IMG/VR virus record: IMGVR_UViG_3300005573_000154
Location: 1 to 41,236 of that record
Strand: one strand, 5' to 3'
DNA: 41,236 bases
Shown here: piece after piece, positions 10,453-39,031 of the stretch
How positions within the stretch are numbered: the stretch's first letter is position 1
Layout: every line of letters starts with the position of its first letter
Program-made: the position numbers and the translations under genes
Notes under the pieces: generated by a model
Seen by the model: only the letters and a program-made list of their open reading frames with translations
Databases searched by the model: none
What the model was told of the DNA's origin: nothing

Positions 10453-10465
10453 TGAGGAGGGGGAG

Positions 10466-22689: not shown

Positions 22690-23355
22690 TTATACCTTGA
22701 CACCGCCCCGGGCTGACATAAATTTCAGGATTATATGCGCCCCAGCCCTAAGGGCCTTCGGATCAGTATTAGGCTTCCTCTCCCATATCTTAAGCTCCTC
22801 CTCAGCTATAGCCGTCCACCGGCTCACAGACTCCTTCTTAAGCCTCTGATAAAGATGCAACATGAACCTTAAGACGGTCAACCTCTTATCCCCGGTAAAG
22901 CCAAAAGCATCACAGACATAGCGGGAAAGCGTCTCAATATACGCCCTATCATACCAGAACTGCTCATAAGCCTTTTGAGCATCTTCCGATAGCTCCCTCC
23001 CCCGCTTCCTCCACCATTTCTCATACTTTAACTTAGCTCTTTCTATAATCCTCATCTCATTCTCCGCCAAAAGGATATGACTATAAATCCACCTATCCTT
23101 TATGCTCTGAAATGTAATCGGCTCATCACCAAGCTTCACGATCTCATTATAGTATAAGAAAGGCTTTCTTTCATACAATACAGTAAAAGGCAGTAGCCTT
23201 ACATCTCTATTCCCAGTTGACATCTGCTGAGACTCCTGTATCTCGTCTTGGGGATTATTTCCTTCACCAGATTGAGCATCATCTCCCTTAACGCTATTAC
23301 CATTCATCCCCTTTGCATCTTTGCTATTTTTCGCACTCTCCTTCGCCAAAGTCAT
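22690..23355 (-). CDS. Protein with disordered N-terminus and a possible C-terminal MCP-like helical domain
   Basis: KYEKW...VCDAFGFTGDKR..VLRFMLHLY...NTDPKALRA aligns by eye with the MCP (YLDSKGITGGVRALYLAFALKLW...GLDTTLL). Confidence 0.65.
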   Translation of the reverse strand: MTLAKESAKNSKDAKGMNGNSVKGDDAQSGEGNNPQDEIQESQQMSTGNRDVRLLPFTVLYERKPFLYYNEIVKLGDEPITFQSIKDRWIYSHILLAENEMRIIERAKLKYEKWWRKRGRELSEDAQKAYEQFWYDRAYIETLSRYVCDAFGFTGDKRLTVLRFMLHLYQRLKKESVSRWTAIAEEELKIWERKPNTDPKALRAGAHIILKFMSARGGVKV

Positions 23356-23489
23356 ACCTCAACACTAGAGAATATTATAGCGAAGTATATAAAGATAATG
23401 CTGGCACCCACATTGAAACCCCTGCATCGCAAGATTTAAAAGCTGGTATTACGTGCCTACACATGCAGGTAAAGGGGTGAGGTAGGGAG

Positions 23490-23867
23490 ATGCCGCTCTA
23501 CCGAGACGGCATAATGATGTTCGAGAAGTATTCGAAGAAGTATAACCCGACGGTAATCGGCACCAGGTTCACGGATGTCCAGGCCACAGCGCTAGCGAGG
23601 GCTCAGGCAGGCCTCAACAAGGTTGACACCATCAGGTCAATGGTCAGGGACTACCTAGACTCCAAGGGGATCACGGGCGGCGTCAGGGCGCTCTACCTGG
23701 CGTTCGCCCTGAAGCTGTGGGCCCACGTTGAGAGGCAGGGAAACACCGCATCCAACAAGATTGCAGACGGCCTAATCGCCTACTTCAACAAGGCCTACGG
23801 GCTTGATACTACGCTACTCACCGACATCGCCAACGCAATCATCGTGAAGCCATCGGCTACACCGTAA
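23490..23867 (+). CDS. Major capsid protein, SIRV2/Adnaviria fold
   Basis: KYSKKYNPTV, GITGGVRALYLAFALKL and GLIAYFNKAYGLDTTLL match the SIRV2 MCP pattern (NPTV...GITGPNRAIYQGFGLKV...GLKGYYISAFNANPQVL). Strong RBS and terminator. Confidence 0.9.
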   Translation: MPLYRDGIMMFEKYSKKYNPTVIGTRFTDVQATALARAQAGLNKVDTIRSMVRDYLDSKGITGGVRALYLAFALKLWAHVERQGNTASNKIADGLIAYFNKAYGLDTTLLTDIANAIIVKPSATP

Positions 23868-23918
23868 AACAGCCAACCAGCTCACATCTTTTAAATTCCC
23901 CCTTTTTCTTTTTTTCTG

Positions 23919-25007
23919 ATGAACGGGAGACCGGTAGTATATTACATCTACCCAACCACGAAATGGGTCTCCTTCAGGATAATAGCCGAGGAACATATAA
24001 GACAGATACAAAAACAGTTTTACGTCCAGAAGGTTGATGAGACGGCCCTAGCAACAATACTACCGATAGCATCAATATCAGCCAAATCAGTCATATTCCT
24101 CCACCCATACTTCTATCCGATACAGGTCTATGAGAGGAGGCTTTTTTCAAGGATCGGAAAAATAGGCAACCTCATAGGGGTAGATGTTGCGGACACGGAT
24201 CATATGACAGAGATAGCCGTAAGGCTAACGGGATACGCAACAGCCATGATAGTCCCATCAAACTTCTCAGGGAAAACATATGTAGAGTCAGGGGTAAAGA
24301 CGCCAGTCCACGTGATTCCACATGGAGTCCACGAGTCATACATTGATGCAGAGCCATCAAAGCCCAACATATTCAAGGCCCTCCACGACTACAAGGCTAT
24401 GACGAAGAAGAAGCTGATGCAGATATGGGTCTTACACAGCTCATACCGCAAGGGCGAAGACCTCGCATACAAGATCTTCAACATACTCGTTAAAGAAAGG
24501 ATGGACGTAGCCCTAGTCGTCAGAAGACCACTAAGCATAGACCTATACGACTCCCCAATAAACCCCGAAAAGCTAACGCCAAAGATAACAATAGGCAAAT
24601 CATACCTCACGGATGAGGAGATAAAGGAGCTGATGGACATATGCGACATCTTCCTCCTAGCAAGCAGGGGAGGAGGCTTCGAACACCCACCCCTACTGGG
24701 AATGGCCAGGGGTGAGATAGTCATAGCGGCCAAGGGAGGAGCATGGGAGGACTACATGCCGGAATGGGGCCTAGTCCAATCACAGAAAAGCGAAACAGTC
24801 CTGCCCGGAAACCCGATACACGACGGCAGGGGAGTAGAAATGATAGCCGACAACGCAGTAGCAAAGATCTACGAAATACTAAACAACATGGACGAATACA
24901 AGGCGAAAATCAAAGAACACGTAGAAAAACACGTAAAACCAAACTTCACATGGGATAAAATAGGCCAAAAGCTCAGAGAGCTGACAGCAAGATATTTACA
25001 CATGTAG
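23919..25007 (+). CDS. GT-B (family 4) glycosyltransferase
   Basis: IVPS, VIPHG, RKGED and SRGGGFEHPPLLGMARG motifs; adjacent to the MCP as in rudiviruses. Confidence 0.9.
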   Translation: MNGRPVVYYIYPTTKWVSFRIIAEEHIRQIQKQFYVQKVDETALATILPIASISAKSVIFLHPYFYPIQVYERRLFSRIGKIGNLIGVDVADTDHMTEIAVRLTGYATAMIVPSNFSGKTYVESGVKTPVHVIPHGVHESYIDAEPSKPNIFKALHDYKAMTKKKLMQIWVLHSSYRKGEDLAYKIFNILVKERMDVALVVRRPLSIDLYDSPINPEKLTPKITIGKSYLTDEEIKELMDICDIFLLASRGGGFEHPPLLGMARGEIVIAAKGGAWEDYMPEWGLVQSQKSETVLPGNPIHDGRGVEMIADNAVAKIYEILNNMDEYKAKIKEHVEKHVKPNFTWDKIGQKLRELTARYLHM

Positions 25008-25040
25008 GATCACCCCATTATATGGGGGAGGAGGAAAAAG

Positions 25041-26360
25041 ATGGCAACATCAGACCAGATACTCAAGAAGCAGAAATACTTTGAGAAGACGCTATCGCAG
25101 AGCGCAATCTACGCAATATACCTCAGGCACCTGGACACGGCACCCCTATTCGCAGAGAACATCTGGTTCCAGATACCGGTCTTCGACCTATCAGCGCTAG
25201 GGCTAGGCCTCCTATACAATATACTCCCAATAGAGTTCCTGCCATTCCCAATAGACTTCCAATACCAGTCGCCCACAGCTGAAGAGACGCTACAAGGCAT
25301 ATGGGCCAACTTCGTTCCAGTTGAATTCGCTAGGATGTATATCTGGATGACCGACTACCGTGAATACATCCTAGAAAACATGAAGGAGGAATATCAATTC
25401 GACATGATAATGGAGTCCCCGAAGAAGGCCGTCTATGGCAAGACGCTATACGCCAAGGGCATATATGACCCGCCAGTCCAGAGAGAATTCCTCAGGAGCA
25501 CATTCATGAGGCTAAGGTTGCTCAGGAAGCCAGACGTATCATACCGAGACATGCTTAAAGACCTAGCAGAATACCTGAGGATGGCTGGGGTCACGGATGA
25601 ACACGTGTGGAACAGGCTGATGCTGATATACGCCGCCCAGACACAGGCATTTGTCCTCGGGCTAAGCCCACTGGGGGTGGGCAGGCTATCCAGAAGGGAT
25701 GGAGACATGGCGGTTGTAACGATAATGGATGCACGTGGAAACATAGTTGACGTAAGGTTCAGGACTCTAGACCACAACCAAATAGGATTCATACTCGGCC
25801 TAACGCCCCTAGGATACGGCTACCTCCTCCCCCGTGACGAAAGCATATACAAGATGCCCGATGGAAAGAAGAACCCGCAGATCATAGACATAATCAAGAA
25901 GAAGATCAGGGGAATGAGGGATAGATACGTGCTAACAACCTTCGCCTACACCAACTACCACCCCGCCCAAGAGATGTCAGACTACCACAAGAGCCTCAAA
26001 ACAGCGCAATACGACACTCTCCAAACATATAGATCCATGATAGAGGACTGGGTTGCACGCCAAATACCGCCCGATGAGGCAAACCCGGCCAGAATAAGAC
26101 ACTACCAGAACGCAGTCCTCCAGCTCATATCATGGCGGGCGAAGCGCCATAGGTGGGGCTGGGAGGGCTGGAAGGCCATGACCGAGGACGAATTCAGGGA
26201 CTGGTGGCTCGGATACTGGAAACAGCAAGGCTTAAATCAGTCTGTGCTAAGGAATTTATACGAGGGAATAGAGCCTTGGCTGAGGAAGCTCCGAGAAGGA
26301 AAGCTAGAATTAGGAGAGAGGGTGAAGAGGCTGAGGCGGACGTTAGCCCGGCTGATGTAG
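25041..26360 (+). CDS. Probable minor structural protein
   Basis: In the structural operon; internal repeat (FVLGLSPLG / FILGLTPLG); C-terminal helical region weakly MCP-like. Confidence 0.7.
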   Translation: MATSDQILKKQKYFEKTLSQSAIYAIYLRHLDTAPLFAENIWFQIPVFDLSALGLGLLYNILPIEFLPFPIDFQYQSPTAEETLQGIWANFVPVEFARMYIWMTDYREYILENMKEEYQFDMIMESPKKAVYGKTLYAKGIYDPPVQREFLRSTFMRLRLLRKPDVSYRDMLKDLAEYLRMAGVTDEHVWNRLMLIYAAQTQAFVLGLSPLGVGRLSRRDGDMAVVTIMDARGNIVDVRFRTLDHNQIGFILGLTPLGYGYLLPRDESIYKMPDGKKNPQIIDIIKKKIRGMRDRYVLTTFAYTNYHPAQEMSDYHKSLKTAQYDTLQTYRSMIEDWVARQIPPDEANPARIRHYQNAVLQLISWRAKRHRWGWEGWKAMTEDEFRDWWLGYWKQQGLNQSVLRNLYEGIEPWLRKLREGKLELGERVKRLRRTLARLM

Positions 26361-26392
26361 CGCCAGTAAGGCCTCAATCAATAATACAGACA

Positions 26393-26629
26393 ATGCCACA
26401 GCCCGTTGCGACACAGCAACCCGTCATCGCCCCAGACATACGTGACGAGCTAACAACCCTAATACAAGACCTGCTCCTAAAAACACATGAGCTAAGCTTC
26501 GAATATTCGACAATGGAATGCGAGGATCTGAGCGCATGCCCACTTGGAAAGAAGTGCAAGGAGCTATTCAAGATCGTTAAGAGGCTCAATGAGGTCGTCA
26601 GGAAGGCGACGCCGCCCCCAGTAGGATGA
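26393..26629 (+). CDS. Small Cys-containing helical protein (start uncertain)
   Basis: CEDLSACPLGKKC. The upstream part of the track ORF overlaps the previous gene. Confidence 0.6.
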   Translation: MPQPVATQQPVIAPDIRDELTTLIQDLLLKTHELSFEYSTMECEDLSACPLGKKCKELFKIVKRLNEVVRKATPPPVG

Positions 26630-26642
26630 ACGGTGGGGTGAG

Positions 26643-26918
26643 ATGGAGACCAAATCCATCCTCATCCCCCCAATTTTTATGCAGATAGACGGCGTCACGG
26701 TAGAGCTAGTTGAGGTCAGCAAGCACTTCCTAGCCCCAGACCAGCCATACTACATAGCCTCAGTAAAGATTATATACAAGGGGATACACAGCCGGGTCTT
26801 CCCAATCTTCGCAAAAGATATAACAGACCTGAAGAACAAGCTCAAGGTGGAAATAAACAAGGTGAAATTCATAGAATACTCATGCGGACTTGAGGAGGTG
26901 AAGAAGCTCATATGCTAG
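26643..26918 (+). CDS. Hypothetical protein
   Basis: GGGGTGA RBS; overlaps the start of the large gene. Confidence 0.75.
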   Translation: METKSILIPPIFMQIDGVTVELVEVSKHFLAPDQPYYIASVKIIYKGIHSRVFPIFAKDITDLKNKLKVEINKVKFIEYSCGLEEVKKLIC

Positions 26919-29900
26919 ACGATGAACCATTCCAGCTAACCCCAGAGGAAATAGAGGCCATAAGCAAGGCGGTAGCAGACGCAATAGCCCAAAACATACA
27001 AACCATCCAAAACACGATAACAAACAACCTACACGTGTATGAAATAATACCCGAAGACAAAATAGAAGAACTAATTGACCTAGACCTAATAGCATCATCA
27101 GTTCATGGCGTAACCGACATACTGGGACAGATCTCAGGCTGGTTCCAAAGCGTAATAGACAACGCAAGAAAACTCATAGTAAGCGGAATACAGGGGTTCA
27201 TAAATACATATGTAATGCCAGCGATAAACACCATAAAAGACTGGTTCTCTAAAACAGTTCCAGAAGTTGGAAGGGCCTTCGGCGACCTCGTAGGAATAAT
27301 ATCGGACAAGATCACGGCCCCATTAAGATCTGTAGCAAACTTCTTCACAGTAGATATACCAAACTACTTTAGAAAAGTAACCGACTTCTTTACAAAGGAT
27401 ATACCCAGCTTCTTCTCAAAGGTAGTAGATTTCTTCACGAGAGACCTACCCGGATACTTCAGCAAGGTAGCCGACTTCTTCACCAGAGAACTACCAAGCC
27501 GATTCAGCACAGTAATAGACTTCTTCACAAAGACGCTACCGCAACACTTCGGGTCAGTAATAGACTTCTTCACAAAAACACTCCCACAACACTTCGGCAT
27601 GGTAGCCGACTTCTTCACAAAGACAATGCCCCAATACTTTGGAACAGTAGTTAACTTTTTCACCAAAACCCTGCCAGACAACTTCAACATAGTAATAAAC
27701 TTCTTCACCAAAACAATTCCACAATACTTCGGCCTCGTAGCCGACTTTTTCACAAAGACAGTCCCACAATATTTTGGCATGGTAGCAGACTTCTTTACCA
27801 AGACAATTCCACAATACTTCGGCATGGTAACTGACTTCTTCACCAACACGGTGCCAAAATACTTTGGACTATTAGCTGACTTCTTTACCAAAACAGTCCC
27901 ACAATACTTTGGAATGGTGGATGATTTCTTCACTAAAACGGTTCCACAATACTTTGGGCTAGTCGTTGATTTCTTTACCAAGACAGTGCCACAATTCTTC
28001 AGCATGGTAATGGATTTCTTCACCAAAACAGTTCCACAATATTTTACCCTCGTAGCAGACTTCTTCACTAAGACGGTTCCGCAATATTTTGGAATGGTAG
28101 CCGACTTCTTTACTAAGATGGTTCCACAATATTTTGGCATGGTGGCGGACTTCTTCACTAAGACAATTCCACAATATTTTGGAATGGTAGCCGACTTCTT
28201 CACCAAAGCAGTTCCACAATACTTTGGAATGGTAGGCGCATTCTTCACCGAAACGTTGCCAAAATGGATAGAGGGAATGAGAAAAGGGGTTACAGACTTC
28301 ATAGACCTGTTAATGAAACTGCCATCAAGAGCGGCTGACATACTCATGACAGTTGGAAAATTCCTATTCGACACAATTATAGATCCCATGATAAAGGGAA
28401 TCAACACATACATCATAGCACCACTCGCAGGCGGCGTAGAAAGAATGTCAGGAATACTCAACAGCGTTGGAGCCGCATTCCAAGGATTCATGAACGCAAT
28501 CCTAAAATTCCCAGAATGGTTCCAGAGAAACCTAGTCGAACCATTCCTATCAGGACTAGGAAAAATAGGTGAATGGATCTGGAATGCACTGCCAGGATGG
28601 GTGAAAGATGCATTAAACGCAATCACGAACTTCTTCACCAAAGACTTGGTAAACTTCTTCACCAAAACCCTGCCAAGCTTCTTCGACACATTATCCAAAG
28701 GGTTCCAAGACTTCATAAAAGACCCACTTGGATGGTTCCAGAGAAACCTAGTTGAACCGCTAGTTGAAGGCCTAAACGCCATCGGGCAATGGATATGGAA
28801 CGCCCTCCCAGACTGGATGAAGAACGCAATAACAGCAATACAAGACTTCTTCACCAAGACAGTTCCAGAATTCTTCAGCTCAATTGCAAAAGGAATACAG
28901 GAATTCTTCAAAGACCCATTAGGATGGCTCAAAACACACCTAGTCGAACCAATAATCCAAGGATTCAATGCCCTGGGACAATGGATTTGGAACGCATTAC
29001 CGGATTGGCTCAAAGAAGGGCTAGAGGCAATAGGAAACGTATTCAAGGCAATAGCAGAAGGTGTAGTAAACTTCTTCAAAGACCCACTGAGAACAATCAT
29101 GAAAGGATTCGAAGCATTATGGAGCGGAATACAATGGCTGGGACAGAAAATCTGGGAAGGCCTACAATGGCTAGGCGGAATAATATTCAAGGGGCTGGTA
29201 ACCGCAGGAGAATGGCTATGGAACGCAATTAAGGGAGGGGTAGAATGGTTCATAAAGGCGCTAACAGACTTCGGGACAACAATCGTCAACACGATAACAG
29301 GCGCAGTAGTAGGGGGGCTAAAGGCAATAGGGGAATCGCTCATAAAAATGACCGTTGACTTCGTGGAATGGCTACTCGGAGCATCACAGAAATGCGCAAC
29401 ACATGTGGGCCCAGCAATAACCGACCTAGCCGTCGCATTAGTTAAGCCATTCGGAGTTATAGTTCCAACACAATTAGGTGCACCACTAGTAGCACTAGTT
29501 GACGAAGTCAAGCTCGCCAAGAACATCTCACAGTCCATAACATCCCTTGGCAAACTAATCGTGCTATGGGGTGGAACCATCGCAACCAGCCAAGCCCTCG
29601 CAACAGGAGCATGGGCGATACTGCACGGCATCGCAACGCCGCTGGACAAGGTGAGGATAGTAACACCATTCAAGATAAAGGCTAAGGCAAAAGGCAAGGG
29701 CAAGTTTCATCCGGCTGGAGTTGGCGCTGAGGGAGGAGCAGAGGGAGGCGCTGAGGCAGGAATATCTGTCCCACTAACGATAAACCTAGGACTATTCATA
29801 AGGCATATTGCCAGCGAGATAAGGAAACACGCCGACACAATAGGAAGATCACTTGCATATGGATTCGGCATATGGATAACCCAGCCGATGGTCAGGCTCG

Positions 29901-32900
29901 CAAGTAGCATATTCAGAAACATGCTAGTCGTTGAGCTACCAACACTAGAAATGATTACCGAATCCATGAGGAGACACATGCCACACGAAAAATTCAAGGA
30001 CATATTGAACAAGTCAAGAGAATACCTAGCCCTCTACGGATACAGCGACACCGTGATACAATGGCTCACCTCAACAGTAGATGAAGAGGGAATGGCAATA
30101 ACCATAACTGACAGATTTGGCAGACCAAGGAAGATCCCAGTATCATTAATGTATAACCTGCCGTCACCATCCGACGTTGCCAGAATGGTTATCAGAGATG
30201 TAATCATAAACATTGACGACCTGAAAAAGATGTTCATGATGAGAGGCATGAGCGAGGACATAGGCATCCTATACTACCTGCTACACTTCAGATACCCGCC
30301 ACCCGAAAGGCTATGGATATTCTACACCAGGGGAATAAGCGGGCTACTATGGGCTAGAATATCAGGAACAGAAGCTAGAGACGTTGAAAGGGATGTTAAG
30401 GCATCTGGAGGATTCCTGCCAAGATCACCAGAAGAACTCAACTTTGAAGCATCAACGTTAGAGAACCTACTAAAGACATACCTAAAGTGGCATGATTTTG
30501 CGAGGTTTGCATATGCAGAAGGATGGCCATCAGACAACCTCATAGTAATGGATACACTTGCAGACATACCGACGAAGATTGATCAGAGATGGCTCGTTAG
30601 GTTTGGGCTATACCAGCTACTGAGCGAGAGGGGAGTCGGATATAAATCAGCCGTAAGCGAATTCTGTGAAAAGGTTGTAGAAAGCGCATCAAAAGGAAAG
30701 GTAATATTAGACCTAACCAACTTCTGCCGGACGCTACAAGCGACAGGCCTGCACCCATACTGGGTTCCAATAACTGCGGTAGCTGAGACGATAAACGCCA
30801 TAACGGATGAGAGAACGCTCCTGAGAACCGGCGTAATGAGCCTATATAAGGAGGGATTCCTCGACAGCTCCGCTGTATCAAGGCTTGGCCAGGGGATAGT
30901 GATGACATCATTCAACGTGGCATACTTTGACCCAGTATCAAACACGTGGAAGACCGGATACATAAACGTCCCGCTAAGATACCTTGGAATGGAGGCCCAG
31001 CTAATAGGCCTAAGGGCCATAATGGACAGGGCCCTAGACATCCTAAGAGACATACAGAGAGATGCACTAACAGCATACCAGGAATTCATAATAACGGATG
31101 AAAGCGAATTCAAGTCAAAGCTATCAAACATAATAAACAGCATAAACTCAATCTACGAACAGGAATACACCAAGATAATCGGAGAATCGCCGCCAGAGGA
31201 TCTAAAGCTCAAATACGTTGAAAGCTACTACTCAGCATACCTCAAATCCCTAGAGATTTGGAGAGAGGTATTCACCACAAGAAGGATCAGGATGTGGACT
31301 CAGAGATGGCTAGGATGGGTCATGTATAGGGCCGCATACGGAACAGTAACAAAGGAAGACATACAGAAACTCGTATCACTAATGGGAGACTACGCAAAGC
31401 TAACCGAAAAAGAAGTCCAATTCATACAAGAAGTCCTAAACATAATGTATGGCATGGCAAGGAGGGAGGTGGCGGCTGAATACCTGCCAACGCCATCAAC
31501 AATGGCCACGCTAAGCGAATACCTGACACTAGACACAGGCCTAGTCAAGAAAATACTAACGGAGAGGGGAATACCAGAAGAATGGCAGAACATATGGCTG
31601 AGATACATATCGGTAAAGCCGATCAAATCAGATGCAAAATCACTGCTATCAGCACATGTAAGAGCATTCAGATACGGGGCAATAACAAGGGAAGCCCTAG
31701 ACGCATTCATATCAACCCTGCCACAATACGGCTTCACGGATAAGGAGATAGACATCGTAAGGAGAATCGCAGAACTGGAGGAGATGATACTTGAAGCCCG
31801 TGAAAACAGGCGTGAATACATACCAACACCATCAATGCTGGCAACACTATCAGAGTATGTAGCCCTAGACCCAAGCATGATTCAAAAGGTATTTGATGCC
31901 AGAAATGTTCCACCAGAATGGAGGGCAATATGGTCTCAATACATATCAGTCAGGCCGATAGCGGATGATGTTAAGGCATTGCTATCAACATACAGGCGTG
32001 TATTACTATACGTCAAGATACCCGACGAAATAGCCAAACAGGTGCTAGAATACGCCAAGCTGATAGGGTTTACTGACAGAGAGCTAGCAATACTAGACCT
32101 GAGAAACAGGCTAGAGGAAATGCTCATAGAATACAGGGAGAACAGGAGAGAATACATACCAACACCATCAATGCTTGCAACAATGTCAGAATACATGACA
32201 ATACCAGCAGATCTAATACAAAAGGTGTTCGAAGCAAGGCATGTTCCACCTGAATGGCAGACAATATGGATGCAGTATATCAACATCAGGCCGATAGTTG
32301 ATGATGTAAGAGGCTTATTATCCTCATACCGGAGAGCCCTGATATACGTCACGCTACCGGATGACATAAAGAAGAAGGTGGAATCCTACGCCAACACAAT
32401 AGGCTTCACCCAGACGGAATGGGACATACTGACACTAAGAGTAACCCTTGAGGAACTGATACTAGAGGCCAGGGAGAATAGGCGTGAATACATACCAACA
32501 CCAATGACATTGGCAACACTATGCGAATACCTCCCAGAGGCCAGAGAGTTCTTTGACGACGTCGTAAAGGCTAGGAGGATACCAACTGAATGGCAGAAGC
32601 TATGGGCCAAATACATAGACCTCAGGCCGCTTATTGACGACATAAAGAGATACCTGTCAAGGGCAGAACAACTATACGTCAGATTCATGATAAAGAAGGA
32701 CGACTTCATGAAGGTTCTAAACGAGGTTGCCAAGAACCTAGGATACACGACAACCGAGGTTGACTTCCTGCTAAAGGTAACAGAATTCGAGAGATACGCC
32801 AACGCATGGAGAGAGCTAATAGGAACCGTTGACAGGCTAGTAGAGCTCAGCGAATATAGCCCAAGAGCATCAAAATACGCCCTAGGAAAGGTCTATGAGA

Positions 32901-33178
32901 TGATAGACGCCCTCCCACTCCCACAGGCAGACAAACAGGAGCTAAAGGCCATGTGGGAGGAATACATCAAGAATAGGCCGGTCAAATCAGAGGCAAGGCT
33001 ATACATCACACAGCTATCAAACGCCTATGCAGAAGGCCTGATAAGCGATGCGGACTTCTCCAGAGAACTAGAATCAATGAAGCAATGGGGATTCTCCGAC
33101 AACGAGATAATGTTCTATAAAGCAAGGGCCGCACTCATGAAGGCAAGAAAGCTCAAGCTACCGCTAATGTGGGAGTAG
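26912..33178 (+). CDS. Large (2088 aa) repeat-rich structural protein, probably terminal structure/fibre
   Basis: 21 x 15-aa repeats (VADFFTKTVPQYFGM), Trp-rich amphipathic repeats, and four 112-aa C-terminal repeats (EYIPTPSMLATLSEY). Confidence 0.8.
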   Translation: MLDDEPFQLTPEEIEAISKAVADAIAQNIQTIQNTITNNLHVYEIIPEDKIEELIDLDLIASSVHGVTDILGQISGWFQSVIDNARKLIVSGIQGFINTYVMPAINTIKDWFSKTVPEVGRAFGDLVGIISDKITAPLRSVANFFTVDIPNYFRKVTDFFTKDIPSFFSKVVDFFTRDLPGYFSKVADFFTRELPSRFSTVIDFFTKTLPQHFGSVIDFFTKTLPQHFGMVADFFTKTMPQYFGTVVNFFTKTLPDNFNIVINFFTKTIPQYFGLVADFFTKTVPQYFGMVADFFTKTIPQYFGMVTDFFTNTVPKYFGLLADFFTKTVPQYFGMVDDFFTKTVPQYFGLVVDFFTKTVPQFFSMVMDFFTKTVPQYFTLVADFFTKTVPQYFGMVADFFTKMVPQYFGMVADFFTKTIPQYFGMVADFFTKAVPQYFGMVGAFFTETLPKWIEGMRKGVTDFIDLLMKLPSRAADILMTVGKFLFDTIIDPMIKGINTYIIAPLAGGVERMSGILNSVGAAFQGFMNAILKFPEWFQRNLVEPFLSGLGKIGEWIWNALPGWVKDALNAITNFFTKDLVNFFTKTLPSFFDTLSKGFQDFIKDPLGWFQRNLVEPLVEGLNAIGQWIWNALPDWMKNAITAIQDFFTKTVPEFFSSIAKGIQEFFKDPLGWLKTHLVEPIIQGFNALGQWIWNALPDWLKEGLEAIGNVFKAIAEGVVNFFKDPLRTIMKGFEALWSGIQWLGQKIWEGLQWLGGIIFKGLVTAGEWLWNAIKGGVEWFIKALTDFGTTIVNTITGAVVGGLKAIGESLIKMTVDFVEWLLGASQKCATHVGPAITDLAVALVKPFGVIVPTQLGAPLVALVDEVKLAKNISQSITSLGKLIVLWGGTIATSQALATGAWAILHGIATPLDKVRIVTPFKIKAKAKGKGKFHPAGVGAEGGAEGGAEAGISVPLTINLGLFIRHIASEIRKHADTIGRSLAYGFGIWITQPMVRLASSIFRNMLVVELPTLEMITESMRRHMPHEKFKDILNKSREYLALYGYSDTVIQWLTSTVDEEGMAITITDRFGRPRKIPVSLMYNLPSPSDVARMVIRDVIINIDDLKKMFMMRGMSEDIGILYYLLHFRYPPPERLWIFYTRGISGLLWARISGTEARDVERDVKASGGFLPRSPEELNFEASTLENLLKTYLKWHDFARFAYAEGWPSDNLIVMDTLADIPTKIDQRWLVRFGLYQLLSERGVGYKSAVSEFCEKVVESASKGKVILDLTNFCRTLQATGLHPYWVPITAVAETINAITDERTLLRTGVMSLYKEGFLDSSAVSRLGQGIVMTSFNVAYFDPVSNTWKTGYINVPLRYLGMEAQLIGLRAIMDRALDILRDIQRDALTAYQEFIITDESEFKSKLSNIINSINSIYEQEYTKIIGESPPEDLKLKYVESYYSAYLKSLEIWREVFTTRRIRMWTQRWLGWVMYRAAYGTVTKEDIQKLVSLMGDYAKLTEKEVQFIQEVLNIMYGMARREVAAEYLPTPSTMATLSEYLTLDTGLVKKILTERGIPEEWQNIWLRYISVKPIKSDAKSLLSAHVRAFRYGAITREALDAFISTLPQYGFTDKEIDIVRRIAELEEMILEARENRREYIPTPSMLATLSEYVALDPSMIQKVFDARNVPPEWRAIWSQYISVRPIADDVKALLSTYRRVLLYVKIPDEIAKQVLEYAKLIGFTDRELAILDLRNRLEEMLIEYRENRREYIPTPSMLATMSEYMTIPADLIQKVFEARHVPPEWQTIWMQYINIRPIVDDVRGLLSSYRRALIYVTLPDDIKKKVESYANTIGFTQTEWDILTLRVTLEELILEARENRREYIPTPMTLATLCEYLPEAREFFDDVVKARRIPTEWQKLWAKYIDLRPLIDDIKRYLSRAEQLYVRFMIKKDDFMKVLNEVAKNLGYTTTEVDFLLKVTEFERYANAWRELIGTVDRLVELSEYSPRASKYALGKVYEMIDALPLPQADKQELKAMWEEYIKNRPVKSEARLYITQLSNAYAEGLISDADFSRELESMKQWGFSDNEIMFYKARAALMKARKLKLPLMWE
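27332..28276 (+). repeat. 45-bp (15-aa) coding tandem repeat, 21 copies
   Basis: GACTTCTTCACCAA-type units every 45 nt. Confidence 0.9.
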
Positions 33179-33190
33179 GGGTGACAAAAA

Positions 33191-33514: not shown

Positions 33515-33519
33515 TCCCA

Positions 33520-34137: not shown

Positions 34138-34191
34138 CACCAAAACAGCCATCAACACATATATATAAACCATCTAACACACCTAATCACG

Positions 34192-34773
34192 ATGTCCCAC
34201 ACAAGCCATGAAAAGCCCGACACAGCAAAACTGAGTGGATGGGTTGAGGCCATAGTCAGGGACAAGGACGGAAACATAAAATACCATATAAACACGCTTG
34301 AAGAAGGCGAAAAAGAAGAGGAAGAAGAAGGAGACTGCGCCATCTCAATATTCCCAGCATCACAATCAGTGACATTCTACTGGAGGAGAAACGTAATAAC
34401 AAACGTAGGATTTGCGGCGGTCATACGGCTAATATTCGAAGGCTTAACAGAGACGAAATTCGGCTACCTAGCAATCGGGACTGGAACAACAGTGGAAGCC
34501 GTAACGGATACAAAGCTGGAGAATGAGATAGCGAGAAAAAGCGCCACAACCACGCAATCAACCCTAAACATAACAGGAGACCTAGCAATAGTTGAAGCAA
34601 CATTCTCAAAGGATGACGGCCTATCAGGGACACACAATGTCTCAGAGGTAGGAATATTCAACGCCCCGACAGGAGGCATACTACTAGCACGAAAAGTATT
34701 CGCACCAATACCAATAAACTGGGACATAGGAGACACCATAACCATGAGATACTTCATAAACATAACAAGATAA
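34192..34773 (+). CDS. Tail-fibre/baseplate-anchor-like beta protein (paralog of 37055-37543)
   Basis: NVITNVG...FGYLAIGTGTT...DTKLENEIARK...SEVGIFNAPTGGILLARKVF. Confidence 0.75.
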   Translation: MSHTSHEKPDTAKLSGWVEAIVRDKDGNIKYHINTLEEGEKEEEEEGDCAISIFPASQSVTFYWRRNVITNVGFAAVIRLIFEGLTETKFGYLAIGTGTTVEAVTDTKLENEIARKSATTTQSTLNITGDLAIVEATFSKDDGLSGTHNVSEVGIFNAPTGGILLARKVFAPIPINWDIGDTITMRYFINITR

Positions 34774-34783
34774 AGGTGAGATA

Positions 34784-35152
34784 ATGCCGGTTCGAATAAG
34801 GGAGAAAAAACGATTCAAGGGAACGGCAACCCCAACGGAACTAAACCGTGAGACAACAGTAATAGACCTGCCAAACCAGGCAGACGACTTCATCCTAGAA
34901 GGTCAAATAAGCCTCCAGAACATGCAGTCAGGGGATACGGTAATATTAAAGTTCTACATAGCAGTAGATGGTGAAAACCAAGTGTTAAGCGACAATGTAA
35001 TGTTCATGGGCGCACAGGCCATACCAGTCGTAAGAATACCATCAATAACCCTAGCATACGACTCAAAGCCGAAGCTAACCCTAACACAGACAACTGGAGT
35101 CATCAGATCATATCCATACAGTATAATAATCCAGGTAATGGAGGTGATCTGA
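34784..35152 (+). CDS. Beta-sandwich structural protein
   Basis: Similar to the C-terminal domain of 38273-39031 (G.I.L..M..GDTV...Y;  L.QTTG..RSY.Y). Confidence 0.7.
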   Translation: MPVRIREKKRFKGTATPTELNRETTVIDLPNQADDFILEGQISLQNMQSGDTVILKFYIAVDGENQVLSDNVMFMGAQAIPVVRIPSITLAYDSKPKLTLTQTTGVIRSYPYSIIIQVMEVI

Positions 35153-35155
35153 GAC

Positions 35156-36805
35156 ATGAGCCTATGGCATCCCATGAGGCTTAGATGGACGGTAAAGCTA
35201 TCAGAACTAGAAATAGACACAAGCAAGGACTGGAGAGGCTATGTAATAAAAAACCTCGGAGCACCAACAGACCCATACGACTCAGCAAGAAAAATAGACC
35301 TAGACACCCTAGAAATACCCTGGAATAGAGTAACAGATAAGCCGGAAAAATATCCACCAGAATCACACGGGTCAAGTCATGGAGCAGATCCAAATTATCC
35401 AACCTCGGGAGCAAGCGATCCAATAACCGGGTGGATCTATCCAAGCCACATAGGCCCAAGATCAACGGACTATACCACGCCGGTGCGCATGTGGTTCTGG
35501 ACAAGGGACTACACCGGACAAAACACGCTAAACAACATACTATCACCAATGGACTCTGGAGCCGGTAAACTTGGAGACAGCAGTTACCCCTGGGGAGAAA
35601 CATGGACTAGATCACTCTACACGGATAACATAAGGCCGGTAGCAAGCGGCAGTGGAGGAAACATCGGCGCATCAGACAATTACTACTACTCAGCATACAT
35701 ATACAACATCTACACGAGATACATTGACTGCGGAACACCAATATCAGGAGTGCCATCAAGCGAAATACATGCCGACTATATATACAACAAGTCAGGAGAC
35801 GGATACGGATACCTCGGATCATCAAGTCAAAGATGGGGCTACGCCTACATCGTAAACCTATACGCCAACTATCTAAACGGCTGGAACCCAGACGCCCATA
35901 GGAGCCGACATGAAAGCGGTGGAGCTGATGCCATAACCGGCTGGATAAGCCCATCATATATAGGGCCGAGATCTGATACCGCATCATCTACAATATTTAG
36001 AACTGATAACATTGCTGGCACTAGCGGAGTTAACCACAAGTTCCGCCCATCACGGGATACGTTTGGATACTTGGGTGATACAAGCTACCGTTGGAACTTC
36101 CTATACACATATTATTCATATATGTGGGAGCTACGTTTCAGGGGAAGCGGGTATGCATACTTCCCAGCCGACACCAATACGGATTGCTATATAGAGCCCA
36201 TGTCGGATGCACGTAGCTTTGTCGGCACATCCAGCTATCGTTTTTACCAAGTTAGAGCAGTTTACATAACCTCTGGGGATCTATGCTTTGAGGATCGGTA
36301 TTGCGCCGTTTGTGGTAAGAAGTTTAAAGTCGGAGACTCCATCACGCTTAAAGTTATAGCCGTAGATGATGATGAATGCAGAATAAGGACGATACCAGTT
36401 CACGTTGAGTGCAACCCCCATAACCCTAACCCAGACCTCCTCAAATTACACGAGGAGATGTTGAAGCCTAACAGGGGTAATCTACCGGAAGAGTTCAGGC
36501 CAAAGGCTAAGCCTTTCGGCAATCCCGAACCCTTAAAAGAGGGAGAATTTGAAGTTGTAAGCGTCACGGTTGAGGATGAAAACACAGCCATGTTCAACGT
36601 AATAATGTGGGATGGGACACCCCTCAGCATACCAGCGCCAACAAATATATCGGATGAAGATCTAAACAAACTAGTCCAAGAATATTACGAAATGAAGAAA
36701 CAATTTGAAAGGGAGCTTGAGGAGAGGAGGAAGAAAGGCCAAGCTAGGTTAAATAGGGACTGGCGTGGCTACAAGGGGAAGATACCAGCCGGAAAACCCT
36801 CATAA
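35156..36805 (+). CDS. Fibre/adhesin-like protein with internal repeats
   Basis: Duplicated DPITGWIYPSHIGPRS / DAITGWISPSYIGPRS; repeated G.LG.SS..W..Y units; HRSRHESGGAD motif; C-terminal CAVC...H..C. Confidence 0.75.
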   Translation: MSLWHPMRLRWTVKLSELEIDTSKDWRGYVIKNLGAPTDPYDSARKIDLDTLEIPWNRVTDKPEKYPPESHGSSHGADPNYPTSGASDPITGWIYPSHIGPRSTDYTTPVRMWFWTRDYTGQNTLNNILSPMDSGAGKLGDSSYPWGETWTRSLYTDNIRPVASGSGGNIGASDNYYYSAYIYNIYTRYIDCGTPISGVPSSEIHADYIYNKSGDGYGYLGSSSQRWGYAYIVNLYANYLNGWNPDAHRSRHESGGADAITGWISPSYIGPRSDTASSTIFRTDNIAGTSGVNHKFRPSRDTFGYLGDTSYRWNFLYTYYSYMWELRFRGSGYAYFPADTNTDCYIEPMSDARSFVGTSSYRFYQVRAVYITSGDLCFEDRYCAVCGKKFKVGDSITLKVIAVDDDECRIRTIPVHVECNPHNPNPDLLKLHEEMLKPNRGNLPEEFRPKAKPFGNPEPLKEGEFEVVSVTVEDENTAMFNVIMWDGTPLSIPAPTNISDEDLNKLVQEYYEMKKQFERELEERRKKGQARLNRDWRGYKGKIPAGKPS

Positions 36806-36847
36806 ACAAGCTTTTATACCAGCAAATACCCATAGCATCAGGGAAGC

Positions 36848-37030
36848 ATGATCTGCCCATTCATAGGGGTATGTAGGTTAAAGGTCTCGATAGAGCACTA
36901 CTCGAATGTATGCTCCAACCTGTCAAAGGACGCATACAAGGGATGCGACGAGTATAAGCGGCTATCCGCAGAGCCGAGAACACCATCAGAATGGGGAAGA
37001 CTGCTAACAATAACACCACCGCCACCATAA
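36848..37030 (+). CDS. Small Cys-rich protein
   Basis: CPFIGVC...C...C. Confidence 0.6.
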   Translation: MICPFIGVCRLKVSIEHYSNVCSNLSKDAYKGCDEYKRLSAEPRTPSEWGRLLTITPPPP

Positions 37031-37054
37031 AAGTGAAACACCCAGTGAACGGAA

Positions 37055-37543
37055 ATGCACGACAAAAGCAGGGTCAAGGGATGGATAGAGGTGATAATAA
37101 CCGACAGACACGGAAACATCAAGTATCACATCGGATCTACACGTGTAAGACAACTATCAAACATCATCACCAACGTGGGGCTGGCCGCACTAGTAAGGCT
37201 CATGGGAAGCGGCCTAACCGAGTCAAAATTCGGCTACATAGCCATAGGAACGGGAACAACCCCGGAATCCGAGACAGACACAGCCCTAGAAAACGAGATA
37301 AAGAGAAAAGCCGCAACCATAAGACAGGTAACAACAACAATAGACGGGGACACATGCCTCTTCGAAGCAATCTTCTCAAGAATAGACGGTCTAACAGGCT
37401 CGCACAACATATCAGAAATAGGCATATTCAACGCCCCGACAGGGGGAATACTACTAGCACGGAGAACCTTCCTACCAGCACCAGTAAACTGGGACGCAGA
37501 AGAACAGGTAACAGCACGATACTGGATACAATTCACACGGTAG
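37055..37543 (+). CDS. Tail-fibre/baseplate-anchor-like protein (paralog of 34192-34773)
   Basis: High identity to 34192-34773 but lacking its acidic insertion. Confidence 0.8.
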   Translation: MHDKSRVKGWIEVIITDRHGNIKYHIGSTRVRQLSNIITNVGLAALVRLMGSGLTESKFGYIAIGTGTTPESETDTALENEIKRKAATIRQVTTTIDGDTCLFEAIFSRIDGLTGSHNISEIGIFNAPTGGILLARRTFLPAPVNWDAEEQVTARYWIQFTR

Positions 37544-38171
37544 GATCAGGCTTCCAAATACAAAGATCCTTGAGGTAATCAAGGCTCGGCAACCTCAAGA
37601 CACGCCTAACATACGACACCTCAGGCGGCTTTGCGCCAACCATAACCCCGGGCTGATCATGGTCACGGACATACACGGAATCCCTAGCCTCAACAACCAC
37701 AATATTATACACCCTCCTAGCCATAGCCGGAGCATAACCCCTCTCAACACGTGCATCAGACACCCCAACACCATCCCTAACCTCAATCACAATATTCTTC
37801 AACCCCTCCCTATACACCCTAGCGCCAAGAACATCACACCCCCTATCAACCATCCTAACCCGGTCACGGGCCTCAACAGTCCAGCCATAAGCAACATAGC
37901 CATCCTCAACAAGCCTATTAATTAGATACCCCAAGAAATTCTTAATAAAAGCAGACGGCCTAAAATCAGTAAAACGATCCTTAACAGGCATCCAAGACTC
38001 CTTCGAAACCCTCCAAAGCCTCTCACGATAAACCCTCTCAGCCAAAACCTGCAAATCCAGCGGAGCGCCATCAAGATAAAAAACCCTCAAACACTCAAGA
38101 ATCCTCCTAGCCTTCAACTCAGCCCATTGTTCATACGACAAGCCATACCTATCAGTATAACTAACCCCCAT
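37533..38171 (-). CDS. Hypothetical protein with short repeats
   Basis: GAGGT RBS; three VEARD.V-like repeats; G/T-rich codons as in other minus-strand right-arm genes. Confidence 0.65.
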   Translation of the reverse strand: MGVSYTDRYGLSYEQWAELKARRILECLRVFYLDGAPLDLQVLAERVYRERLWRVSKESWMPVKDRFTDFRPSAFIKNFLGYLINRLVEDGYVAYGWTVEARDRVRMVDRGCDVLGARVYREGLKNIVIEVRDGVGVSDARVERGYAPAMARRVYNIVVVEARDSVYVRDHDQPGVMVGAKPPEVSYVRRVLRLPSLDYLKDLCIWKPDPTV

Positions 38172-38272
38172 AACCTCAAAAACACACGTGTAATCAACAA
38201 CATCAAGCTTTTCCAGCCGCTTAAAAAAAGCTTATAAACATGTGCGGCCACGAAACCCTAGAGGGGATCGTA

Positions 38273-39031
38273 ATGCCCGGAAAAAGAAGGCGAACACTCA
38301 CTAGAAGCCCAGCCCTAAGGCTGGAAATGTGGGATAAGAAGATGAGGGGAGACGTGTATGGAACCATACTCGAAAGCGTCAAGCCCCTAGCACTCCAGAA
38401 GGTCGGAAGCTACCAAGCGATACACGAACACCTCATAGACATCGTAAAAGACGCAGTATCAAGATCATACTCGCAATCAGATCAGGAGAAATCCATGATA
38501 CATGAATACATGTGGTTCGGATCAAAGCTATGGAGGTTATCACAGACCTACGACGGCCAGGCGCTACAAAACGAGGCAGACGCACTATTCATGTGGTATG
38601 TAACCCGGGGAAGAGACCCATATATACTAAGGACAATAGCCCAGGCGCTAAACGTTAAAATATCGCCCACAGATGAGATAGTCCAGAGGATCTTGGCCAG
38701 GCCATACGTCTCAGTCGTAGCAGAGGGCCGAGTCACAATGGATGGAACCGAGAAGGTCTTGGCAGAATACACGGGCCCAACCTCATTCATAACAGGATAC
38801 ATAGACCTATCGCCGATGGTGGACGGCGATACTGTAACAATATCAGAATACGTCAAGATAAGGTATGACGGAGAATACAGGCTCATCTTCTCAGAAACAT
38901 TAGGAAATAAGCAACCAGAACCAGCAACGTATATACTCCCAAGGCTAACCGGATACGCAATCAAAATAACAATGAAGCAGACAACGGGAACATACAAGAC
39001 ATTCGAATACATGATCGTGAAGGTGATCTAA
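38273..39031 (+). CDS. MCP-like N-terminal domain fused to a beta-sandwich domain
   Basis: RSPALRLEMWDKKM...YGTILESVKPLA...EYMWFGSKLWRL...ALFMWYVTRGRDPYILRTIA follows the SIRV2 MCP pattern; C-terminal domain similar to 34784. Confidence 0.75.
   Translation: MPGKRRRTLTRSPALRLEMWDKKMRGDVYGTILESVKPLALQKVGSYQAIHEHLIDIVKDAVSRSYSQSDQEKSMIHEYMWFGSKLWRLSQTYDGQALQNEADALFMWYVTRGRDPYILRTIAQALNVKISPTDEIVQRILARPYVSVVAEGRVTMDGTEKVLAEYTGPTSFITGYIDLSPMVDGDTVTISEYVKIRYDGEYRLIFSETLGNKQPEPATYILPRLTGYAIKITMKQTTGTYKTFEYMIVKVI

What the first reader, a model, noticed from the sequence alone, without database searches (positions are those of the whole stretch)
22690..39031. Several MCP-fold domains besides the single canonical capsid protein
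Seen: apart from the 125-aa MCP, MCP-like helical patterns occur in the N-terminal half of 38273-39031 (fused to a beta-sandwich shared with 34784), the C-terminal half of 22690-23355, and weakly at the C-terminus of 25041-26360. Established: rudiviruses use one MCP homodimer; lipothrixviruses and tristromaviruses use two paralogs. Inference: these fusions are end-capping adaptors that join the helix to terminal fibres.
Basis: inference. Interest (0 to 1): 0.6.

Follow-up and report, generated by a model that had tools for sequence, protein, structure and literature searches.

The report
Extra capsid-fold proteins in archaeal rod virus
This complete genome of a hot-spring rod-shaped archaeal virus encodes, besides its 125-residue capsid protein, three more proteins with the same capsid fold, but two of the three types were already published for related viruses and their proposed role at the virion tips is still untested.

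Summary

- **38273-39031 (252 aa):** residues 9-126 are homologous to the window's own MCP (hhalign 97.9%, E 3.8e-13). The C-terminal half is shared with 34784-35152 (BLASTP E 2e-6).
- **22690-23355 (221 aa):** residues ~104-219 match the MCP profile (hhalign 79.9%, E 1.4e-5). In an unbiased search of 48,161 PDB chains with the AF2 model, the top 7 hits are all adnavirus MCPs (Z 10.2-6.7).
- **25041-26360 (439 aa):** there is no sequence signal. For the AF2 model (pLDDT 86), 8 of the top 10 PDB hits are adnavirus MCPs, on residues ~320-437 (Z 9.3-6.4).

The window is a complete genome with 392-bp inverted terminal repeats (ITRs), and it is Chiyouviridae-like.

Novelty is low. The 252-aa type (MCP plus jelly-roll) and the 439-aa type (rudiviral ORF488/ORF464 minor structural protein with an MCP-like domain) were described for relatives in 2024 and 2026. 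The 221-aa protein is a divergent occupant of a known "second MCP paralog" slot.

The end-capping idea is plausible for the 439-aa and 252-aa proteins, from homology to a rudiviral virion protein, the fibre-gene neighbourhood and the patchy distribution. It is untested, and a complex prediction gave no answer. It is doubtful for the 221-aa protein.

The parts
23490..23867 (+). Canonical SIRV2-type major capsid protein (125 aa)
   Evidence: Pfam Sulf_coat_C E 1.3e-18. It is 30-33% identical to rudivirus MCPs by tblastn.
22690..23355 (-). 221-aa MCP paralog, transcribed divergently from the MCP gene. Residues 1-61 are predicted disordered, residues 62-103 form a conserved helical extension, and residues ~104-219 carry the MCP fold.
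   Evidence: AF2 model. VIA-align top hits are all adnavirus MCPs. hhalign 79.9%. A 47%-identical homolog on another contig shows the same synteny.
22699..23046 (-). MCP-fold domain of the 221-aa protein (residues ~104-219)
25041..26360 (+). 439-aa homolog of the rudiviral ORF488/ORF464 minor structural protein; more than 150 relatives in metagenomes
   Evidence: Duan et al. [quoted passage not shown]
25998..26351 (+). MCP-like helical bundle of the 439-aa protein (residues ~320-437)
   Evidence: pdb_via_wide: 8 of the top 10 of 48,161 chains are adnavirus MCPs. This is fold evidence only; there is no sequence signal.
38273..39031 (+). 252-aa fusion of a full-length MCP homolog with a C-terminal beta-rich domain. 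The start at 38273 (MPGKRRR) agrees with the homologs.
38297..38650 (+). MCP-homologous part of the 252-aa protein (residues 9-126). The first 30 residues, which include the start of this part, are strongly basic (+6).
   Evidence: hhalign 97.9%; charge count.
38678..39028 (+). C-terminal domain of the 252-aa protein, shared with 34784-35152. Published homologs are described as a single jelly-roll.
   Evidence: BLASTP E 2e-6, alignment A7, literature. The fold was not tested here.
34784..35152 (+). 122-aa stand-alone paralog of that C-terminal domain
26912..33178 (+). 2088-aa terminal-fibre protein, a homolog of rudiviral P1070
   Evidence: phmmer against the SIRV3 gp29 coiled-coil structural protein, E 5.8e-13. 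phrog_7334 E 7e-40.
23919..25007 (+). GT4-type glycosyltransferase between the MCP gene and the 439-aa gene
   Evidence: phrog_2170 E 2e-40.
34192..34773 (+). Tail-collar/tail-fibre-like protein, paralog of 37055-37543
   Evidence: phrog_4176 tail fibre E 2e-11. The two paralogs match at E 9e-59.
37055..37543 (+). Second tail-collar/tail-fibre-like protein, upstream of the 252-aa gene with one minus-strand gene (37533-38171) between them
   Evidence: phrog_4176 E 1e-13.

Best explanation
[quoted passage not shown] I propose that one protein, the 125-aa MCP, builds the body of the rod as in rudiviruses. Three further proteins carry the same SIRV2-type helical MCP fold.

- **439-aa protein.** It is the counterpart of the minor virion protein ORF488/ORF464 found in every rudivirus record. 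Its C-terminal MCP-like bundle would let it dock onto or terminate the MCP helix, while its large non-MCP part would contact the terminal apparatus. That apparatus includes the 2088-aa P1070-like fibre protein encoded just downstream.
- **252-aa protein.** It is a full-length MCP homolog that keeps a basic N-terminal arm, fused to a beta-rich domain. That domain also exists as a stand-alone protein (34784-35152). It would enter the helix locally and display the beta domain as an attachment point for fibre-module proteins.
- **221-aa protein.** It is a fast-evolving MCP paralog in the slot next to the MCP gene. It is more likely an accessory or assembly factor than a tip protein.

Shown here: the folds, the homologies, the gene order and the phyletic distribution. 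Inferred: presence in virions, location at the ends, and binding to the MCP.
For: - **Folds and homology:**
- **439-aa protein and rudiviral ORF488/464:** hmmsearch E 5e-6; hhalign 65.7%, E 5.8e-5 over 251 collinear columns with shared motifs; the BFVD top hit is the SRV 464-aa protein, annotated 'structural protein'. The family is present in all 42 rudivirus records, the same number as have an MCP.
- **Gene order:** the order MCP, GT, 439-aa, 91-aa, giant fibre protein is conserved in 4 related loci; in a fifth (L006) the same genes are present but the 439-aa homolog lies after the fibre gene.
- **Accessory distribution:** two complete ITR-bearing relatives (30 kb and 28.5 kb) have only one sequence-detectable MCP-like ORF and a stand-alone 134-aa beta-domain protein, with no MCP fusion. 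Other relatives have 2 or 3 MCP-like ORFs.
- **Linkage of the beta-domain genes:** in one relative the fusion gene is followed directly by two stand-alone beta-domain genes.
- **Literature:** body reconstructions of rudiviruses contain only MCP homodimers. The 2026 Asgard virome paper calls the ORF488-type protein an 'MCP-like minor structural protein'.
Against: - There is no virion proteomics, imaging or expression data for this uncultivated virus, and no RNA runs hold it.
- The 252-aa protein has a more basic N-terminal arm than the MCP itself (+6 against +2 in the first 30 residues).
- Between this virus and a distant relative, the 252-aa protein is better conserved (50% identity) than the MCP (35%) or the 439-aa protein (24%). 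Both points would also fit a stoichiometric partner of the MCP.
- The MCP-likeness of the 439-aa protein rests on a predicted structure with moderate Z-scores for a helical bundle, and no sequence signal.
Confidence: 0.45

Rival explanations
1. Heterodimeric body capsid. The 252-aa protein (or the 221-aa protein) pairs 1:1 with the 125-aa MCP along the whole rod, as the two MCP paralogs do in lipothrixviruses and tristromaviruses. The rod would then be decorated along its length with the beta-rich domain.
For: The 252-aa protein aligns with the MCP over nearly its full length, including the N-terminal arm. That arm is strongly basic. The protein is conserved at 50% identity in a virus whose MCP is only 35% identical. 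Duan et al. 2024 list the Chiyouvirus counterpart as a second MCP and leave its role open.
Against: Two complete ITR-bearing relatives lack any such fusion and any second sequence-detectable MCP. The word-based search found only 16 homologs, against more than 150 for the 439-aa protein, although search sensitivity and contig fragmentation weaken this comparison. The gene lies 15 kb from the MCP gene, inside the fibre module. BaiyanV1, a complete genome, is reported to have a single MCP.
Confidence: 0.2
2. Non-virion paralogs. The 221-aa protein, and possibly the 252-aa protein, are not built into particles. Instead they would act inside the cell, for example as chaperones that hold the MCP or viral DNA before assembly, or as regulators or decoys.
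For: The slot next to the MCP gene holds plain MCP paralogs with acidic tails in relatives (net charge -6 to -8 in the last 40 residues). The same slot holds an unrelated protein in other relatives, so it is dispensable and fast-evolving. SSRV1 and ARV2 carry a 108-aa MCP paralog just upstream of their MCP gene. Such rudiviral paralogs are reported not to be incorporated into virions.
Against: The 221-aa family keeps a strongly conserved core: 58 invariant columns fall within residues 61-213 across sequences down to 44% identity. This shows selection but does not say for what. Nothing tested here separates an intracellular role from a structural one.
Confidence: 0.25
3. For the 439-aa protein, the resemblance is a generic helical bundle, not a true MCP-derived domain.
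For: No significant sequence similarity to any MCP profile: best hhalign 7.3%, E 0.005. Z-scores of 6.4-9.3 lie in the range the tool warns can arise for helical bundles. Foldseek alone did not rank MCPs.
Against: Eight of the top ten of 48,161 representative chains are MCPs of six different adnaviruses, covering nearly the whole reference domains (79 of 82 residues of 3fbl, 76 of 83 of 3f2e). The weak hhalign alignment falls on the same residues and in the same order. The motif G-L/I-N/S-x-x-x-L at the start of the last helix is shared with MCPs. An independent paper reached the same conclusion for homologs.
Confidence: 0.1

Closest known systems
Chiyouviridae (Bathyarchaeia bifangarchaeales chiyouvirus 1, 26.9 kb; Duan et al. 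2024, PMC10848311)
   Same: The published gene table lists the same structural genes with near-identical sizes. [quoted passage not shown] Further downstream comes a 249-aa 'SIRV2-like MCP'. Both come from hot springs, and relatives sit in Bathyarchaeia MAGs.
   Different: This genome is 41.2 kb rather than 26.9 kb. Its MCP is only 52-54% identical to the 124-aa MCPs of the Chiyouvirus-sized relatives I could fetch. It has an additional 221-aa MCP-fold protein next to the MCP gene, which that paper does not list.
MCP-like minor structural protein and MCP plus jelly-roll (DUF6385) fusion of Baiyanviruses, Ahmunviridae, Chiyouviridae and Rudiviridae (Microbiome 2026, PMC13700489)
   Same: [quoted passage not shown] These are the 439-aa and 252-aa observations.
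   Different: The Pfam DUF6385 model does not detect the window's C-terminal domain. The jelly-roll fold was not tested here. No function is demonstrated in that paper either.
Rudiviridae (SIRV2, SSRV1, SRV): MCP homodimer, ORF488/ORF464 minor structural protein, P1070 fibre protein, short MCP paralog of SSRV1/ARV2
   Same: The MCP family is shared (30-33% identity). So are the ORF488/464 homolog, the P1070 homolog and the glycosyltransferase beside the MCP gene. A second MCP paralog lies directly next to the MCP gene in SSRV1 and ARV2.
   Different: The rudiviral paralog is 108 aa, lies on the same strand and lacks an N-terminal arm. Here the neighbour is 221 aa, divergently transcribed, and has a 100-residue N-terminal extension. 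Rudiviruses have no MCP plus beta-domain fusion (tblastn found none).
Lipothrixviridae and Tristromaviridae two-MCP heterodimers (AFV1 ORF132/ORF140, SIFV, SFV1, PFV2)
   Same: They share the fold. AFV1 ORF140 and ORF132 are among the best structural matches of both models.
   Different: In those viruses the two paralogs are similar in size, adjacent, and both universal in their families. Here the extra paralogs are fusions or extended forms, are scattered in the genome, and are absent from some complete relatives.

Membership tests
SIRV2-type adnaviral MCP (Pfam PF12193 Sulf_coat_C) | Sequence match to the family model above its threshold | tested here: met
   Met only for the 125-aa MCP (67.8 bits against a cut-off of 25.2). 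The three candidates do not reach it: 0 Pfam hits for the 252-aa and 439-aa proteins and none to this family for the 221-aa protein. Two homologs of the 252-aa protein hit it at E 0.008.
SIRV2-type adnaviral MCP (homology by profile comparison) | Profile-profile similarity to MCPs over most of the MCP length | tested here: met
   252-aa family: 97.9%, E 3.8e-13, met. 221-aa family: 79.9%, E 1.4e-5, against a background of 3.7% or less for all other window ORFs, probably met. 439-aa family: 0.4-7.3%, not met.
SIRV2-type adnaviral MCP (fold) | C-terminal four-helix bundle superposable on 3F2E/3J9X and relatives | tested here: met
   221-aa model: 3f2e Z 8.7, rmsd 1.9 over 77 residues; 6wq0 Z 9.8, rmsd 1.9 over 90 residues; the top 7 of 48,161 chains are all MCPs. 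439-aa model: 3fbl Z 9.3, 3f2e Z 8.0, rmsd 3.4 over 76 residues; 8 of the top 10 are MCPs.
SIRV2-type adnaviral MCP (function) | N-terminal basic helix that wraps A-form DNA, and dimer formation | tested here: inconclusive
   The 252-aa protein aligns from MCP residue 3 and carries +6 charge in its first 30 residues. The 221-aa model aligns with AFV1 5w7g_B residues 7-132. Two rows for the 439-aa model span residues 4 to 414-430, which hints that its N-terminal helices mimic the arm. Dimerisation was not resolved (one search gave no answer). DNA binding is not testable here.
Rudiviral ORF488/ORF464 minor structural protein | Collinear homology over most of the protein | tested here: inconclusive
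   hhalign of A4 against A8 gives 65.7%, E 5.8e-5, over 251 columns, with the shared motifs GfILGvTPLGyG / GxILDxTPLDFA and FkxWW...QGLN / FLxYWK...YGIS. hmmsearch gives E 5e-6. The BFVD top hit is SRV ORF464 at E 0.048. tblastn finds nothing. Published HHpred for the Chiyouvirus counterpart reports 100%.
Rudiviral ORF488/ORF464 minor structural protein | Presence in purified virions as a minor component | not testable with these tools
   Known only for cultivated rudiviruses (the SRV ORF464 record note reads 'structural protein'). This virus is uncultivated.
MCP plus jelly-roll (DUF6385) fusion of Chiyouviridae, Ahmunviridae and BaiyanV2 | N-terminal MCP-like domain | tested here: met
MCP plus jelly-roll (DUF6385) fusion of Chiyouviridae, Ahmunviridae and BaiyanV2 | C-terminal single jelly-roll matching DUF6385 | tested here: not met
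   The Pfam PF19912 model finds nothing in the window at E up to 10, nor in 14 domain homologs or 17 full-length homologs. The only hint is an ESM Atlas feature search that lists a DUF6385 cluster at 0.80. The fold itself was not tested, so the published assignment for homologs is neither confirmed nor contradicted.
Chiyouviridae | Shared structural gene set and order with the exemplar | tested here: inconclusive
   Gene sizes and order match the published table. The exemplar sequence was not in the collections searched, so identity and phylogeny were not tested.

The most novel reading that the evidence does not exclude
The 252-aa MCP plus beta-domain fusion could be a stoichiometric partner of the 125-aa MCP. 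The virion body would then be a heterodimeric helix studded along its length with jelly-roll domains, an adnavirus capsid architecture not yet seen. Separately, the ORF488-type protein could be a 'split MCP': an N-terminal arm and a C-terminal bundle separated by a roughly 260-residue insertion. Such a protein might nucleate or terminate the helix at the DNA ends in all rudivirus-like viruses.
Probability: 0.18. Interest if true: 0.65.

Novelty: new member of a known kind. Interest (0 to 1): 0.35.

Why it matters
How rod-shaped archaeal viruses close their helical capsids and attach their terminal fibres is unresolved, because high-resolution reconstructions cover only the body. A universal minor virion protein with an MCP-like domain is the obvious candidate for the junction, and lineage-specific MCP fusions encoded in the fibre module are further candidates. 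This genome carries four MCP-fold proteins (MCP, 221-aa, 252-aa, 439-aa), one more than the related records I could check. That makes it a useful case for in-vitro assembly or cryo-ET tests. The idea that these domains exist is already in the literature, so the gain here is independent confirmation, one additional divergent paralog, and distribution data that argue for accessory roles.

Tried and rejected
- **Complex prediction.** The MCP with residues 1-135 of the 252-aa protein gave no answer (score 0.01, mark 0.32). I do not use it as evidence either way.
- **Foldseek E-values.** None was significant for either model. For the 221-aa model the MCP chains were nevertheless the only low-rmsd, high-probability rows. 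VIA-align was needed to rank them.
- **Sequence-level link between the 439-aa C-terminus and MCPs.** I tried whole and trimmed profiles, the MCP2 group, and the 252-aa and 221-aa domains. None was significant. The rudiviral ORF488 family against the MCP profile also gave nothing.
- **The beta-rich domain.** A profile search of PDB sequences, Pfam scans of homologs and the DUF6385 model all found nothing usable. An ESM Atlas search gave only leads, and the Atlas holds no structure for this protein.
- **tblastn against the phage collection.** The 439-aa protein, its distant homolog and the 252-aa protein gave no match. Megablast of the 18.5-kb region also gave no match.
- **Expression.** No RNA run holds the region.
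- **Upstream slot in two relatives.** I tested whether the gene next to the MCP gene in L003 and L004 is MCP-like. It is not.
- **Not used.** The large representative-protein search was not run, because no claim here rests on absence of relatives.

Full report
**What the window is**

The window is a whole IMG/VR virus record of 41,236 bp with perfect 392-bp inverted terminal repeats. ORF 23490-23867 is a SIRV2-type major capsid protein (MCP). It matches Pfam Sulf_coat_C at E 1.3e-18 and is 30-33% identical to the MCPs of 42 rudivirus records. No nucleotide-level relative is in the phage collection. Near-identical DNA occurs in hot-spring and sediment metagenomes from many studies. Some protein homologs sit in Bathyarchaeia MAGs.

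The gene order runs MCP, GT4 glycosyltransferase, 439-aa protein, 91-aa protein, giant fibre protein. This order and the sizes match the published gene table of Chiyouvirus, the exemplar of the family Chiyouviridae. The present genome is 14 kb larger.

**The 252-aa protein (38273-39031)**

- BLASTP against the window's own MCP gives E 8e-5 over 102 columns.
- I built a profile from 16 homologs of 46-92% identity. Against an MCP profile of seven Chiyou-like and four rudiviral MCPs, hhalign gives 97.9% probability and E 3.8e-13. MCP residues 3-117 align with residues 9-126.
- The same profile's best hit among 177,635 PDB sequences is the SIRV2 coat protein 3j9x, but only weakly (E 0.41).
- The homology therefore covers the whole MCP, including the N-terminal arm. 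That arm is more basic here (+6 in 30 residues) than in the MCP itself (+2).
- The C-terminal half matches 34784-35152 at BLASTP E 2e-6. In one relative it also matches two stand-alone proteins encoded directly after the fusion gene (alignment).
Pfam, PDB sequences and the DUF6385 model are silent. A 2026 paper describes homologs as a single jelly-roll.

**The 221-aa protein (22690-23355, minus strand)**

- BLASTP sees nothing. The family profile (10 sequences) matches the MCP profile at 79.9%, E 1.4e-5, with MCP 9-118 aligned to residues 109-210.
- As a background check I compared the MCP profiles with all 113 window ORFs of 70 aa or more. Only the MCP (100%), the 252-aa protein (96.8%) and this protein (75.2%) stand out. 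The next best is 3.7% and the median is 0.2%.
- The AF2 model has a disordered N-terminus (residues 1-61) and a confident helical part (residues 62-219, pLDDT about 90).
- In an unbiased VIA-align comparison with 48,161 PDB representatives, the top seven are all adnavirus MCPs:
  - AFV1 ORF140, Z 10.2
  - SSRV1, Z 9.8, rmsd 1.9 over 90 residues
  - AFV1 ORF132, Z 9.2
  - Yellowstone SIRV coat C-terminus, Z 8.7, rmsd 1.9 over 77 residues
  - AFV1 virion chain, Z 8.6
  - SIFV, Z 6.9
  - SFV1, Z 6.7
- The re-alignment of Foldseek's own hits agrees.
- Synteny agrees too. The gene lies between a conserved 102-aa gene and the MCP gene, divergently transcribed, and a 47%-identical homolog on a 25-kb contig has the same arrangement. 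In the closest relatives this slot holds an obvious MCP paralog with an acidic tail (phmmer E 7e-13 to 8e-7; hhalign 99.4%). In two other relatives it holds an unrelated protein.

**The 439-aa protein (25041-26360)**

- No sequence method links it to MCPs. The best is a 7.3% hhalign alignment, which does fall on the expected residues in the expected order.
- The AF2 model is confident (pLDDT 86.4, pTM 0.83). Foldseek ranked nothing useful.
- The unbiased VIA-align search put MCPs of six different adnaviruses in eight of the top ten places, all on residues ~320-437:
  - AFV1 ORF132, Z 9.3 (79 of 82 residues aligned)
  - AFV1 ORF140, Z 8.3
  - SIRV coat C-terminus, Z 8.0 (76 of 83 residues aligned)
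  - SSRV1, Z 7.7
  - AFV1 virion chain, Z 7.5
  - SFV1, Z 7.4
  - PFV2, Z 6.5
  - SIFV, Z 6.4
- The Z-scores alone are modest for a helical bundle. The evidence is that this small family monopolises the top of a 48,161-chain list.
- Two rows span model residues 4 to 414-430. This suggests that the long N-terminal helices (5-58) occupy the position of the MCP arm, so the MCP fold may be split by a roughly 260-residue insertion.

**What the 439-aa protein is related to**

More than 150 metagenomic homologs exist. Its profile matches the rudiviral ORF488/ORF464 family in several ways:

- hmmsearch against SIRV3 gp25, annotated 'virion protein', gives E 5e-6.
- hhalign against a six-virus alignment gives 65.7%, E 5.8e-5 over 251 collinear columns with recognisable shared motifs.
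- The BFVD top hit is the 464-aa protein of Stygiolobus rod-shaped virus. Its GenBank record notes 'ORF464; structural protein'.
- That family occurs in all 42 rudivirus records.
- Duan et al. [quoted passage not shown]

**Distribution of the extra paralogs**

I searched whole related records with the MCP profile and the 252-aa profile.

| Record | Size and ends | Sequence-detectable MCP-like ORFs | Beta-domain proteins |
|---|---|---|---|
| G001 | 30.1 kb, ITRs | MCP only | stand-alone 134-aa protein, no fusion |
| G002 | 28.5 kb, ITRs | MCP only | stand-alone 134-aa protein, no fusion |
| G003 | 25.3 kb, classed as provirus | MCP plus divergent upstream paralog | none found |
| G004 | 17.4 kb, linear fragment | MCP plus divergent upstream paralog | none found |
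| G005 | 27.3 kb, ITRs | MCP, an 80-aa paralog and the fusion | two stand-alone proteins after the fusion gene |
| Window | 41.2 kb, ITRs | MCP, 221-aa paralog and the fusion | one stand-alone protein (34784-35152) |

The relatives whose structural module could be read have a 439-aa homolog. So the ORF488-type protein is universal and the other two are lineage-specific additions. This argues against either being an obligate half of the body capsomer.

**Comparison with the literature**

- Duan et al. 2024 (PMC10848311) list two 'SIRV2-like MCPs' in Chiyouvirus, of 124 and 249 aa. They say it is unclear whether both are used. They also note that the second paralog of some rudiviruses is not incorporated into virions.
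- Laso-Perez et al. 2023 (PMC9894754) make the same 'unclear' statement for Ahmunviridae.
- The 2026 Asgard virome paper (PMC13700489) states two things explicitly. [quoted passage not shown] Second, MCP homologs with a C-terminal jelly-roll (DUF6385) are conserved in Chiyouviridae and Ahmunviridae.

The 221-aa protein is a new, strongly diverged and N-terminally extended occupant of a known paralog slot.

**Mechanism**

The best-supported reading has three parts. The 125-aa MCP builds the body. The 439-aa protein is a minor virion protein whose MCP-like bundle docks on the helix. The 252-aa protein enters the helix locally and presents its beta domain to the fibre module. That module comprises the two tail-collar-like paralogs 34192-34773 and 37055-37543, the 549-aa protein at 35156-36805, and the stand-alone beta-domain protein.

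Only folds, homology, gene order and distribution are shown here. Virion presence, terminal location and binding to the MCP are inferred. A complex prediction gave no answer, and no expression data exist. The heterodimer rival is kept at about 0.2, because the 252-aa protein keeps a basic arm and is unusually well conserved. For the 221-aa protein, an intracellular or accessory role is at least as likely as a structural one.

**Verdict**

This is a new member of a known kind, of moderate to low interest.

Noticed in passing
window 1-392 and 40845-41236: Perfect 392-bp inverted terminal repeats, so the record is a complete linear genome. A 24-bp unit repeated about 5 times lies at 381-505, starting within the last bases of the left repeat and running about 110 bp into unique sequence.
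   Followed up: partly
window 17327-18331: A stretch of about 1 kb with almost no ORFs. It is filled with many copies of an AGCGAGCT/AGTGAGCT motif at 17-nt (or 34- and 68-nt) spacing. It could be a protein-binding array, a replication origin or a regulatory region.
   Followed up: no
window 27503-28254: About 17 tandem copies of a 45-bp unit (15-aa repeats) lie inside the 2088-aa fibre gene. The 779-aa ORF on the opposite strand (27364-29703) is probably an artefact of this repetitive coding region.
   Followed up: no
window 34192-34773 and 37055-37543: Two paralogous tail-collar/tail-fibre-like proteins (E 9e-59 to each other) have no counterpart in the related loci fetched. This suggests a lineage-specific duplication in the host-recognition module.
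   Followed up: partly
L013 10001-11723 (record G005): In a distant relative, three genes lie head to tail: the MCP plus beta-domain fusion (247 aa), a 179-aa protein with the same beta domain but a different N-terminus, and a 122-aa stand-alone beta domain. The fusion is 50% identical to the window's, while the MCP is 35% and the 439-aa homolog 24% identical. This hints at module exchange or unusually strong constraint.
   Followed up: partly
window 26643-26918: A 91-aa gene between the 439-aa gene and the fibre gene is conserved in five relatives. Its Chiyouvirus counterpart is labelled 'Acr' in the published table. No family match was found here.
   Followed up: no
window 1-13000: The left third of the genome has strongly positive GC skew (0.15-0.37), against about 0 on the right. 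The first 2 kb have lower G+C (36% against about 46%).
   Followed up: no
homologs of 25041-26360: Copies of the 439-aa family are binned into MAGs labelled Bathyarchaeia, Archaeoglobales, Ignisphaera and even Chloroflexi. Either the virus group has a wide host range or viral contigs have been mis-binned. One related record (G003) is classed as a provirus by IMG/VR.
   Followed up: no
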